In this document: positions 42,112 through 63,558 of the stretch, in pieces
Position numbering within the stretch: position 1 is the stretch's first letter
Layout of the letters: each line of letters begins with the position of its first letter
DNA from: Podarcis pityusensis
Lineage: Eukaryota
Length of the DNA: 64,000 bases
Assembly: GCA_964106645.2 (NCBI GenBank)
Contig: OZ067043.1
Strand: one strand, 5' to 3'
Translations under genes and position numbers: made by a program
The notes under the pieces: model-generated
The model's input: only the letters and a program-made list of their open reading frames with translations
What the model was told of the DNA's origin: nothing
Database searches by the model: none

Positions 42112-45100
42112 ATGATGACGGATCTGGTGGCTTTCCACTGTGCCAACTGCGGGATGAGGTTCCGCTCCAGGCGGCTGCTAGAAAAGCACATGGAAAAATT
42201 CTGCATTGGAGAGGAGACTGCATCTGATGCCAGATACCGAAACAGGCAAGCCCTCTGTAAGGGGAAAGAACCTAAGAAAGCAGAGACTCCGGACAGCATG
42301 GTAAAGACCTGGCAATGTTTGTTAGACTTTCCCCCAACATTTTGGGACCTACTAGCTTGTGTGCTGGAGGGGGAAAGTTATGTGCTGCAATTTTGCTGAC
42401 TGCATTGGCGTATAAGGCTTTTCCAGTCATACCAAAAAGCCATCAATATTTTAAACTTTTTCCTGTGTATGTACACATACAGCAGAAGGAGGAGGAAGGT
42501 GTGCCTAGATTTTCCCCCACCCCAGTTTCGAGGTGTTTCATGAACTGAGAGGGTTTTGAAGCCTTCTGTTTAGATATTTTAGCTTCCATGAATTTGCATT
42601 TGAGTAACAATATATTTTCCTGACACCCCCTTTCATTTATTGGCTTTCTTTTTTGGGTGGTGGTTTCTATGGCTCAGCATCATCAGCTACAAGCACCAAA
42701 AACAAAGAAGCATCACTTGGATGGGGAATATGAGGAACAAGCACACCACTCCAGAAGCTTTGATCATAAAGGAAGTATTTCAGACAGCCAGGCCTTGAAG
42801 AAACTGACTGAAGAGGTACTGCAGAAAAGAAGAGAAGAGCGCAGATCTTTGCTCCATCATAGATTCTCTGTTTACAGTACTTCCATTCTAAACTACTTTA
42901 CTTAGTAGTTAATTCATTCAAACACTTAGGTTATTTCCCCTCATCTCTGATGCCTTTTTATTTTTTGTCACCACAGATGAAAAATTGAGCTGATGAAACA
43001 AAGGGCTCATCATCTGAGCACAGCACCACAAGTCTAGCTTTCAGCTTATGCACTTCTTACAAGCATTTCAGAAAGCTCCCTCACCCCAACATTTCAGTTG
43101 AGCTAAGGGACAATAAGCTGCAGTCTCCCGCTAGACGTGTTTTTAGAGCATTTGACAAACTTACCATTAGGCTTAGAAAGGTCAACTAGTAACATTGGCA
43201 TGGAAAAGGTTGTATGAAACATTGGCCTATAGATTCAGAGAATTTGGCCACTAGTGTTGATTTTCTCGAGTTCCATCTGAAATTCTATTAGTGTTGTGTT
43301 CACCAACAGTAAAAAAGAATGGAAAAGAGCCAGCTCTTTTCTCTATATGATGTGCCAACAGCAAGATTGCCAATGGAAATGCAGGCCTCTTTGGACAGCT
43401 GTAAGAAATTCAGTAGGTGAAACCTTTCCTGTCACTGAGACAGAGTGATGGAAAAGCTTCACCTGTATCATTTCTGCTTAACACACAGCAGAAGACACAA
43501 TAGTCCTGTCAGAAAATAAGCTGGCAACCTTAAATAAAACAATAAACAAACCCTAATTAGCACCCATAACTTGAATAAGTTGTTTCAATATCTTTTTAAT
43601 ATTGTGTTGTAGCTGTTGTAACCCACCTTGGAACCTTGGGGTGAAGGGTGGGTAATAAGTTGTAGTAGTAATTATAATAATAATCACTAAATCACTAAAG
43701 GAATTCTTCCCTTTCACAGTTCCACAAACTGAGGATGTCACTGGAAGACACTCTTCCTACATTCAGGACATTCCAGGCAGAGGTAAAACAGTGATGAAAG
43801 ACTTCTAAAAAAAATGTTGCAGGCTTCTAGCAATTTTAATTCTGGATTGCAGTGCAGTGCTTAAAATTGCCAGAATTGTGTGAGGAACAACTTTACAGAA
43901 ACTCATTGCCATGGGGAGCTCCTTCCTGTGCTGTTCCATTTTCAGACCAGAAAGTGCAGATCATAGCTCAGAACAGGGGGAGCAACACTAAAAGCTCTGC
44001 TCTGAGTTAATGTGGAGCAGACCTGAGATCTTTGGAATTTGCAGGATAAACTCTCCCACTGATCACAGTGATCTAAGGAATACGGTGGTCTTCCCAGTAA
44101 CCTGTCCTGGTAACAGATTAGTAGCCAATGCAAATCCTACAAGCAGGGTGTTATATGCTAGTGGTAGTTGTTCATGAGATAAATATTTGAAATCCATTCC
44201 AATATGATATTATTTTTGTAATGGCTGTGTCCTGTCTTTCCTTACAAGGAATTTAGAGAACAGCTTTAAGCTTGACCACTGAGGAAGTAGGCTAGTCTGA
44301 TAGAGAGTGTGATTTACCCAAAGCTGAATGGAGATTTGAATCTGGGTTTCTCACATCTAAGCCCAGCACTCTGCCACTAAATCATGCAGGCTTTCAGTAG
44401 AGGGCATGCCGAGATCACTTCTTCTGGAATTTACAATTAATTCACCACAACATACCATTTCTCATGGGCATTTAGCTCTGAAGCATTGCATCACTGGCAT
44501 ATCAAACATATCAAACTTGTCATCTTTCCTTGACTCCTAGGTTAACGACAGACACCAGCAGGAATACTGGAAGCGCCAACAGCAAATGGCAGAAGAACAT
44601 GAGCGCCATTTGGCAGATATCCAGGCCAGAAACCAGTACCTGGAGCAGCAGAAGGATGGTAAGAGAATGAGAGTACCTACTAGATTACTGCCTTCTTGCT
44701 TCAGGTAAAGGGAATGACCTGGAGTTCAAAACAATAAAGGATGAGCAAACAGCCACCACTATCCAGCAAATGGCCAGGCCTGATACACAAGGCTCATGAT
44801 ACCACAAGTTCTACAGAAGGGAAGGAGGCAGTTAGACCCATCCACAAATACTACCGACAGCTAATTTTGTACTTGAGAGCTTTCTTGTCTACTTACGTAT
44901 ATTTGGAGGATGCATAGGCCAAGTCCTCAGAAACAGCAGATGACATGGTAAACCTGTGTCCGGACTGTTCCACTTCAGACTGTGCGTGAAGATTTTCATG
45001 ACTGAATTCTCCTCCATACAAAACAACAACACAAAACCCATTTTGCATATAGAAGACTATCATTTCAGGGAATATATTTATACCCTAGCCTTCTCCCTGA

Positions 45101-60700: not shown

Positions 60701-63558
60701 TGTGTTCCATGGTGGACTATGTATTTGATGAGCCTATTGTTTGGAAAAAAATGTTAATCAAAGGGCAGAAGGAACCTTACAAAACGTTAACAGTCCATCT
60801 TACATTCAAATCAGATTAACAGAAGGGTGAGCCAAGCATCTCGCCCCATGCATCAACACACTTTGGTAGGAAATGATAGAATTCCGTAACTGTGGGCTAC
60901 AGCAAAAACAGCTTTTTGTTTCACACAGGTCTGTTGTTTCAGTGCGGGAAATAGTTCACCAGCTTGAAAGTCCTAAGAGTTTAAGCACAGATGAGGAGGT
61001 TGTCACCTGGATCCATCAGAAACTAACCCGGGTGCCAGGCAGCAGTCCACAGCCTTTCAGCCTCACCTATGTCTCCAGATACATTCCCACCTACGGCATC
61101 AAGGTGAATAGCTATCACACTCACAGAAATGCCGTTTAGCACAACATTTTATACATGGCTGGGATAGAATACTATAGAGATGGAAGTAAGCTGTGTTTAA
61201 CTCAGTAGTCACATCGATAGTAATGCTGGCTACTTATAACCAGTCTTGAGTAATTTCTGCACTTGAAAATAGTTATCAACCTTTAACCTGGTCTCTGTTG
61301 CTGTGCCTTTAGCTACATGTTGATTAACAGGCATTTATCAACTTCTGAAGACAACCACTAGTATTCTTAATTTTCTAAACAAGTTGACTTTCTCAGCTGT
61401 ATTACTTCATATTGCTAAGGACAAAAATTCCCTGCTCACAGAAAACTGGCATGTCAGAGTAATTTGAAATGGTATAGTTGAGAAACAAATTTAGTATTTA
61501 ATGTTTGTGAGCAAACTAAGCTTTGGCTGTGTGTGTACAGTGCTCTTATCCAGACTGACATCTAATCTCTGTGGTATTGCAGTTTGCATTGGACAGAGGC
61601 ATGAACTTACCATGGTCTGGCTTGACAATCGCCCAATTCTGCTTCAATCCACCTGGGGCATGTTACTTTGGGGCGCAATGGCTGAAGTATGATTACCCCA
61701 TCTTTGTTGAGGAGCTTGACAATAACAGCTACCAGCAATGGCCTGTGTGGCTTGATGGCTTCAAGGTATCACATCCTTTATTTTGTTGTTCCATCACTCT
61801 GTAAGCCACCCTTCAGTCACAGGACTCTGAGAATGGCCTACAACTAAAAAAAGATGACACTGGGTGTTCCACTCAGCAAAGGATAGGCCGTTGCCTTTCA
61901 GTAAGATGGGTCCCATGCTGTAAGGAACCAATCTGTATTTCAACACTGGTTTATCTGGTATTTTTCACAAGTAATCTGTCTTATTCAGCAGAGTCTACAG
62001 CAAAGTGGCTAAATGCCTCCTGAGCCTAGTAACCAGTTAACTAAGATGCACTGTGTGGAAGGTAACTAGGTGGAGTTTTAAGCAGAATTATTAGCTCCAG
62101 AAAAGTTCAGCAAAGTAGAAACATTCTCTCTAGTGAATTAGTATTGCTATAATTAGGCTGATTCCCTACCACCTATCCCTACTAAATCTGTAGCCTATAT
62201 TTTGATACCCTACTGGGGTTCAAACATTTTTGCTAGCAGCGAGGCTCAGGGTTCTTAATTTCTGTTCCACATAAAGGAAGTGTGTGCATTCCTTTCATAA
62301 ATCCATTGCTGCCCAATTTTTTACAGAAACATGTCATATCACCAGCATTTACTCACTGCCTTATACCAGGGGGCTCCGGGTATGTGAAATTTAATTCTGT
62401 GTTAAGGAGACCTGGCATGATTTTGAATGAGGCAGTCTGCCCATGGTGGAGTACAGTGTAAGCTTTCTTACTGATGACCATATTTATTTCCAAACTCATA
62501 TTTGTGAACCTGTACACAACAGGTGACTCAGCCTTTCCTTTCAGAACCTGCAACTTGTTTTTCAGACCTGTCCCCACAGAGTTTACCATGAATATACAGC
62601 CATCATCATTCACCTGTACCAAGGTGTGGTGAATCCTGCCCAATGTGCCTCGGGTGAAAAAGAATGCCAAGCAGCACAAAGAAGAGTCATGCTAAAAGGG
62701 GAACAGTTACATTACACTCAGAAAAGTGGGGCATGGACAGCTCTTCATGTGTTTTCCAGAGGTTACTGCAACACTGGCATTTACCAACTGCCCTTATACC
62801 AGGGGGCTCCCAGTCAGGTATAGTTAACCAACCAGCTAAAAGTTACGACATACATGCCAATTTTCTTGCAAAAACTATCAAATTCCAGCAGCTGGGCAGG
62901 GGCATGCACTTATTAGCGCGCACACACACACACACACATATATTCTGTACAATGTTTCCCTCCATCACCTGTATATCACCATTCTGTCAAGCTGAAAGTT
63001 ATCCACTTCCCCACTTTTGAGCTTTATGTGAATGCAGCATCAGTTAAGAACTGATGGCTCATCCCTACAGAATTCAGTACTTTCTGAAGTCCCTACTTGT
63101 GTACGCTTAATGCCTGCAAATATCTTAGCAATGACAAAGGGTACAAATGGCAACTAGTTCTCCCAGCTTTTGGAGGTGGTGATGGTGCAAAGCAATGAAC
63201 CAGTGCCTATAACTGCTAAGCATTCCCCACCCCATCTTTGGCTTAAGTGTCACCAGCTCTTGACCCACTTGTTTTTACACACTACTATAATTTAGTCCAA
63301 AGTCAGCAATCAGTTTCTAATTTCAAGATGTTGTTTGGGGTGTATACAAAATTAGTAAGCTTTACAATGTTACTTTGTATTGTTTTGGGAACACTTCTCA
63401 CTATTTCTCTCACTTAAGGAATCTCTTGCAGTAGTCTACTAAAAGAATGCTGCAAAGAAACAGTAGGTGGTTTGTTCTTTCCTTAACAGATCATCCTGGC
63501 TTCCTTATCTGAAGGGAAATGCAGCAGCATTATGAAGAGCATGCTCCAAAAGAAAGAG
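54790..63558 (+). CDS. Uncharacterised multi-C2-like coding region; in-frame C-terminal extension of CCDC17 or an adjacent split gene; continues beyond the window
   Basis: Exons 54790-54831, 55149-55290, 55472-55564, 56349-56556, 56664-56770, 57251-57391, 58244-58398, 58705-58825, 59619-59735, 60133-60230, 60323-60535, 60929-61103, 61583-61765, 62566-62817, 63490-63558. All GT-AG, phase-matched and stop-free (2116 nt, about 705 aa). Includes GFDLYIDGARFLPDGVTVTRV, IGWAALNVF and GYCNTGIYQLPLYQGAP. Confidence 0.88.
55732..55951. mobile_element. Tc1/mariner MITE (CAGTGGTACCT family)
   Basis: TA|CAGTGGTATCTTGGGTT...AACCCGAGGTACCACTG|TA; colinear with 9562-9802. Confidence 0.85.
57620..58130 (-). 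mobile_element. CR1 LINE ORF2 fragment
   Basis: Minus ORF with EQDLGAIV...QCTGTVRKAKSMLGITRKRTENKT...MLLYKSMV, typical of the CR1 RT C-terminal region. Confidence 0.8.

What the first reader, a model, noticed from the sequence alone, without database searches (positions are those of the whole stretch)
42112..63558. A long CCDC17: 15 extra in-frame exons could at least double the protein
Seen: the exon-14 donor at 52247 is phase 2 (AG|gtgaga). The exons at 54790 (42 nt, phase 2-2) and 55149 (phase 2 start) accept it in frame, reading ...KPNKS-TQKQKPKASPYLPR-KFEAVLEWPQ.... Thirteen more canonical exons follow without a stop. The first two downstream exons have no in-frame ATG, and there is no CpG-rich promoter in the 52.6-54.8 kb gap. 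The joined ORF is 4194 nt (1398 codons) and is still open at the window edge. Recalled: human CCDC17 ends shortly after the segment equivalent to exon 14. Inference: this lizard keeps an ancestral, much larger CCDC17 whose C-terminal half was lost or split off in mammals, so it may be annotated as an unrelated uncharacterised locus.
Basis: partly seen in the sequence, partly recalled or inferred. Interest (0 to 1): 0.9.

Follow-up and report, generated by a model that had tools for sequence, protein, structure and literature searches.

The report
Ancestral-length CCDC17 with four C2 domains
This wall-lizard gene is the full, ancestral form of the cilia-associated protein CCDC17, with four membrane-targeting-type C2 domains; mammals kept only the first and snakes the first two, and public databases already list the long form although no paper found here describes it.

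Summary
In detail: 29 canonical exons, 4194 nt, no stop, still open at the window edge. The long protein is real but not new as a gene model. The exons are 99.3% identical to an annotated 1454-aa Podarcis lilfordi CCDC17, and 1400-1500-aa forms are annotated in other lizards, turtles, amphibians, fishes and invertebrates, with relatives in flagellated protists; coral RNA contigs hold the whole frame. Added here: the protein is a zinc-finger-like motif, a coiled coil and four related C2-fold domains, three of them in the extension and without a Pfam family. Synteny (NASP) and a tree place mammalian CCDC17 as the shortened orthologue (one C2). A colubrid snake lost domains 3-4, and a jawed-vertebrate paralogue is also one-C2. 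A skink RNA contig shows a short form ending at exon 14. Exon 15 is optional and broken in an agamid and a snake. A ciliary membrane-adaptor role is inferred. The scan had two notes on this same stretch, none on other DNA.

The parts
41985..42001 (+). X-box-like (RFX) half-site about 110 nt before the ATG, where a skink transcript contig begins
   Evidence: 9-base half-site at 41993 identical in agamid and snake loci, one of 5 such sites in the window; function inferred
42112..42300 (+). Exon 1: start codon and C2H2-like zinc-finger motif
   Evidence: (Pfam zf-C2H2 E 3e-4, below cut-off), motif in 75 of 94 full-length relatives
42678..49199 (+). Exons 2-10 (42678-42815, 43720-43782, 44541-44658, 45446-45605, 45829-45948, 46391-46524, 47472-47606, 48521-48747, 49114-49199): coiled-coil region and proline-rich stretch
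   Evidence: relatives carry PF28454 CCDC17_middle_coil
49573..50945 (+). Exons 11-13 (49573-49788, 50284-50506, 50835-50945): C2 domain 1 (PF28455 CCDC17_C), the only one kept in mammals
   Evidence: (Z 13.8 to Aida C2, 13.5 to PI3K C2)
52090..52247 (+). Exon 14: disordered proline-rich linker; phase-2 donor
   Evidence: pLDDT under 50 over model residues 193-259
52248..52251 (+). Stop codon (52249-52251) met on reading through the exon-14 donor: end of a 693-aa short form
   Evidence: skink RNA contig reads the same way; 41 fetched proteins end at this position
54790..54831 (+). Exon 15: optional 14-codon cassette in the linker
   Evidence: in frame here and in gecko P0002; absent from annotated lacertid long forms; stop or frameshift in agamid and snake
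55149..57391 (+). Exons 16-20 (55149-55290, 55472-55564, 56349-56556, 56664-56770, 57251-57391): C2-like domain 2; snakes end in exon 20
   Evidence: (profile match to domain 1 88%, to domain 3 91%)
58244..60535 (+). Exons 21-25 (58244-58398, 58705-58825, 59619-59735, 60133-60230, 60323-60535): C2-like domain 3, the best conserved, and start of a helical insert
   Evidence: (weak PI3K_C2 match)
60929..61103 (+). Exon 26: helical insert between domains 3 and 4
61583..63558 (+). Exons 27-29 (61583-61765, 62566-62817, 63490-63558): C2 domain 4, completed by two exons beyond the window
   Evidence: (Z 10.2 myoferlin C2A, 10.0 Dock180, all top 50 rows C2)

Best explanation
One gene, the orthologue of mammalian CCDC17, in its ancestral length (about 31 exons, about 1454 aa; 1468 with exon 15). 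Shown: exon chain, conservation, orthology, predicted folds. The protein is a zinc-finger-like motif, a coiled coil, C2 domain 1, a disordered linker, then C2 domains 2, 3 and 4 with a helical insert. The exon-14 donor can be skipped, giving a 693-aa one-C2 form (shown in a skink RNA contig, inferred for this lizard). Mammals lost everything after the linker; a snake lost domains 3-4. Inferred (about 55-60%): it is a scaffold of motile cilia in which the coiled coil dimerises or binds axonemal partners and the C2 domains, of the calcium-independent Aida/PI3K/DOCK type, hold it to the ciliary membrane, as shown for Ccdc33.
For: Exon chain; 118 fetched proteins carry all four domains in one chain, from lizards to sponges, and domains 1, 3, 4 occur together in glaucophyte, choanoflagellate and other protist proteins; three coral RNA contigs hold an unbroken 1438-aa frame; newer lizard annotations join the halves; dN/dS 0.20-0.34; AlphaFold mean pLDDT 81 with four beta-sandwiches; fold matches; mutual profile matches 85-92%; synteny (PMC4082323); tree. 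Cilia link: CCDC17 co-precipitates with DNAAF9 and is called a ciliary tip protein (PMC12700831), is used as a ciliated-cell marker (10.64898/2026.03.14.711768); named relatives all come from lineages with flagella (own knowledge of those taxa); conserved X-box-like half-site.
Against: The only squamate RNA contig examined is the short form. Many annotations split the gene at exon 14. Domains 2 and 3 were not searched as separate models. Lipid binding and localisation of the long form are untested; a C2 fold does not show function.
Confidence: 0.75

Rival explanations
1. In lizards the locus works mostly as two units: a short CCDC17 ending in intron 14 and a three-C2 protein started from an internal promoter near exon 15 (which would then be a non-coding first exon); the joined form is minor.
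For: Skink RNA contig runs from exon 14 into the intron; split annotations at the same point from sharks to lizards; at exon 15 the donor is kept in four squamates while acceptor and frame are not.
Against: Newer annotations of the same species join the halves, often with several isoforms; phases match; invertebrate and protist relatives are single chains; split models start at different internal Met codons in each species; splitting may follow from the short mammalian protein used as a guide (inference).
Confidence: 0.15
2. The gene model is right, but the C2 domains bind proteins or microtubules (as C2D1 does on the ciliary-tip central pair) rather than membrane lipids.
For: C2D1 sits on the tubulin surface (PMC11642885) and appears among fold matches (9nw3); best match of domain 1 is Aida; conserved charges are mixed, with no obvious classical calcium-binding set (inspected only as a list).
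Against: Equally close matches are the lipid-binding PI3K and DOCK C2 domains; Ccdc33 C2 domains are needed for tip function and proposed to bind membrane (PMC12796433).
Confidence: 0.3
3. Mammalian CCDC17 descends from the short 'CCDC17-like' paralogue and the lizard gene is a separate paralogue lost whole in mammals.
For: A short paralogue exists in sharks, sturgeons, lungfish and amphibians; the window's upstream neighbour is KIF2C, not GPBP1L1.
Against: Long gene lies GPBP1L1-CCDC17-NASP-AKR1A1 in a bonefish and next to NASP in agamid, gecko and snake, as does echidna CCDC17; the short frog paralogue has other neighbours; mammals group with reptiles (SH-aLRT 94), the paralogue apart (100).
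Confidence: 0.03

Closest known systems
CCDC17 long forms in public annotation (P. lilfordi CAI5777312.1, P. muralis XP_077784914.1, Zootoca XP_060132934.1, Anolis XP_062835701.1, Xenopus tropicalis XP_012817033.2)
   Same: Same gene, same exons, 73-99% identity for the lizards
   Different: They skip exon 15; the records carry no domain description for the C-terminal half
Mammalian CCDC17 (Pfam PF28454 + PF28455)
   Same: Orthologue: zinc-finger-like motif, coiled coil, C2 domain 1, NASP neighbour
   Different: Ends in the exon-14 linker (about 560-680 aa in the mammals used); lacks domains 2-4; about three times longer branches
CCDC33 / Tetrahymena C2D1 (ciliary tip; PMC12796433, PMC11642885)
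   Same: Coiled coil plus several C2 domains in a motile-cilia protein
   Different: No sequence relationship tested or seen; three C2 domains; no solved-structure sequence match
Aida, PI3K and DOCK C2 domains; ciliary C2 proteins NPHP4, AHI1, CC2D2A, RPGRIP1L (PMC3495828)
   Same: C2 fold; best structural matches
   Different: Identity 7-19%; CCDC17 is not named in the ciliary C2 survey; no Pfam family passes its cut-off on domains 2-4

Membership tests
CCDC17 orthologues | PF28454 middle coil and PF28455 C domain | tested here: met
   precomputed on P0183, 96-100% identical exon by exon
CCDC17 orthologues | Position next to NASP | tested here: met
   shown for agamid, gecko, snake, bonefish and echidna loci; NASP itself lies beyond this window
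CCDC17 orthologues | Groups with mammalian CCDC17, not with the short paralogue | tested here: met
   SH-aLRT 94; fast search, no bootstrap, no clade-rejection test
C2 domain superfamily | Eight-stranded beta-sandwich matching solved C2 domains: domains 1 and 4 | tested here: met
   Z 13.8, rmsd 2.4, 134 aligned; Z 10.2, rmsd 2.5, 118 aligned
C2 domain superfamily | Same fold for domains 2 and 3 | tested here: met
   indirect: strand pattern, profile matches of 88-92% to the neighbouring domains, weak PI3K_C2 hit on domain 3; not searched as separate models
Classical calcium-dependent C2 (PKC/synaptotagmin type) | Conserved aspartate cluster in loops 1 and 3 | tested here: inconclusive
   conserved acidic columns listed but not mapped on the model; no Pfam C2 hit
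Ciliary membrane/tip C2 scaffolds (CCDC33-like) | Localisation in cilia and membrane binding | not testable with these tools
   only a mention for the mammalian protein (PMC12700831)
Single long transcript in lizards | Reads joining exon 14 to exon 15 or 16 | not testable with these tools

The most novel reading that the evidence does not exclude
CCDC17 is an undescribed, very old four-C2 scaffold of motile cilia whose exon-14 donor has switched between a one-C2 and a four-C2 form since early jawed vertebrates; the short form was fixed independently in mammals and in a duplicate gene, and snakes fixed a two-C2 form, each cut falling between domains and possibly tracking changes in ciliary-tip or sperm-tail structure.
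Probability: 0.35. Interest if true: 0.6.

Novelty: new member of a known kind. Interest (0 to 1): 0.35.

Why it matters
Human CCDC17 is an unstudied ciliated-cell protein named for its coiled coil. Its ancestor is a four-C2 protein, so the mammalian gene is a remnant, and work in Xenopus or fish will address a different, larger protein plus a short paralogue that carries the same name. Three C2-like domains lack any family model. Repeated cuts between domains give a natural deletion series for testing what each C2 domain does. It also flags a recurring annotation split. The existence of the long model itself is already in the databases, which limits the surprise.

Tried and rejected
Pfam on single exons: nothing for exons 16-29. 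Atlas search by features on exon 27: only unrelated bacterial clusters at 0.86-0.90, dismissed. Sequence search of solved structures: none. A candidate exon at 42977 was rejected (stop, no donor) and the exon-18 donor moved from 56527 to 56556. Contig look-ups failed for four proteins. The AATAAA at 52240 is not kept at this position in skink, agamid, gecko or snake, so it was not taken as the short form's poly(A) signal. The first tree run timed out. Paper searches found no study of CCDC17 length or domains. Birds gave no hit in any list; not interpreted, since long members can hide behind short cluster representatives (as for Alosa).
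Full report
Observation. The exon chain was rebuilt from the sequence. Fourteen exons span 42112-52247 and fifteen span 54790-63558, 4194 nt in all, with canonical splice sites and no stop. Reading through the exon-14 donor ends the protein at 693 aa (stop at 52249). The CpG argument carries no weight, because the gene's own start is equally CpG-poor.

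Method limits. Folding used the natural P. lilfordi protein P0183. No human sequence was fetched on purpose or used in the tree; primate-labelled and unlabelled proteins from hit lists entered only bulk counts.

The long form is widespread and annotated. Exon 21 alone found 174 proteins. Many match both halves of the window's gene in order: gecko, toad, bonefish, amphioxus, acorn worm, oyster, ribbon worm. The window's exons are 99.3% identical to a 1454-aa P. lilfordi protein named CCDC17, 97.1% to P. muralis and 95.1% to Zootoca. Lacerta agilis, P. raffonei and older P. muralis, Zootoca and Anolis releases split the gene into a roughly 693-aa CCDC17 and an uncharacterised locus. Three RNA-run contigs of a stony coral hold an unbroken 1438-aa frame, direct evidence for a single long mRNA in animals. 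The extension is under purifying selection like the rest of the gene: dN/dS 0.20-0.34 against 0.13-0.24. Two further exons lie beyond the window.

Exon 15 and the short form. Annotated lacertid long forms join exon 14 to 16. Exon 15 is intact in a gecko but has a stop or frameshift in an agamid and a snake: an optional cassette at most. A skink RNA contig is spliced through exons 1-14 and then runs into intron 14, and 41 fetched proteins from sharks to lizards, and a few placentals, end at that same position. A short form is therefore real in at least one squamate, though many of the 41 may be annotation splits.

Structure. AlphaFold on P0183:335-1325 with 62 relatives gave mean pLDDT 81 and four beta-sandwiches; the only long disordered stretch is the exon 14-16 linker. 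Domain 1 matches Aida and PI3K C2 (Z 13.8 and 13.5). Domain 4, folded separately, matches only C2 domains in its top 50 (best Z 10.2). The four domains match one another as profiles (domains 1-2 88%, 2-3 91%, 3-4 92%, 1-4 85%, 1-3 only 11%). Domains 2-4 have no Pfam family above cut-off. Domains 1, 3 and 4 occur together in glaucophyte, Rhodelphis and choanoflagellate proteins, and 3-4 in a chytrid, a green alga and a chrysophyte.

Orthology and losses. The window's upstream neighbours are ARMH1-like, KIF2C and a U5 snRNA (ARMH1 named from recall), which raised a paralogy doubt, the more so as a short 'CCDC17-like' paralogue exists in sharks, sturgeons, lungfish and amphibians. Synteny resolves it: the long gene lies GPBP1L1-CCDC17-NASP-AKR1A1 in bonefish and KIF2C-CCDC17-NASP in agamid and snake, matching the conserved block in PMC4082323; the frog paralogue has other neighbours. 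In the tree, mammals are sister to reptiles and the paralogue is separate. Echidna CCDC17 stops in the exon-14 equivalent, 2.2 kb from NASP, with no trace of the extension; no mammal is among 112 extension relatives. Mammalian branches are about three times longer than reptile ones (0.94-1.29 against 0.22-0.52). The corn snake gene stops in exon 20 and exons 21 onward are missing from a gap-free 5.4 kb before NASP; several other snakes have the same two-domain length. That makes three separate shortenings, each between domains.

How it likely works (inferred). Mammalian CCDC17 marks ciliated cells (10.64898/2026.03.14.711768) and co-precipitates with DNAAF9 among proteins called ciliary tip proteins (PMC12700831). 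Ccdc33, also coiled coil plus C2 domains, organises the tip of motile cilia and needs its C2 domains (PMC12796433). An X-box-like half-site is conserved at the start of the gene. The best reading is a ciliary scaffold linking axonemal partners to membrane through calcium-independent C2 domains; protein or microtubule binding is the main rival.

Verdict. What is not described in the papers searched is the four-C2 architecture and the repeated shortening. Interest 0.35.

Noticed in passing
window 39951-40066 (-): Full-length U5 snRNA (110 bits) between KIF2C and CCDC17; none in the matching interval of the agamid or snake loci.
   Followed up: partly
window about 21283-39150 (-): KIF2C-type kinesin-13 gene, head to head with CCDC17, with a CpG island at 38-40 kb. 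The same order in agamid and snake points to a rearrangement that replaced GPBP1L1 as upstream neighbour.
   Followed up: partly
window about 963-5692 (+): Exons of an ARMH1 (C1orf228)-like gene, named from recall only.
   Followed up: no
window about 8475-9424 and 13047-15130 (-): Decayed LINE reverse-transcriptase fragments.
   Followed up: no
window about 55728-55952: Short transposon-like insertion with inverted ends in intron 17, seen by eye.
   Followed up: no
L002 10001-31574: Xenopus laevis gene named CCDC17 (620 aa) is the short paralogue, not the orthologue of the mammalian gene; the orthologue is split into 693 + 784 aa in one annotation and joined (1472 aa) in another.
   Followed up: partly
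L007 29396-29515: Corn snake stop codon in exon 20 at a position that codes Trp in the lizard; downstream exons absent.
   Followed up: yes
L004 46501-46616: 5S rRNA-like copy inside an intron of the agamid gene.
   Followed up: no
hit lists: No bird protein appears in any list; loss or strong divergence in birds is open.
   Followed up: no
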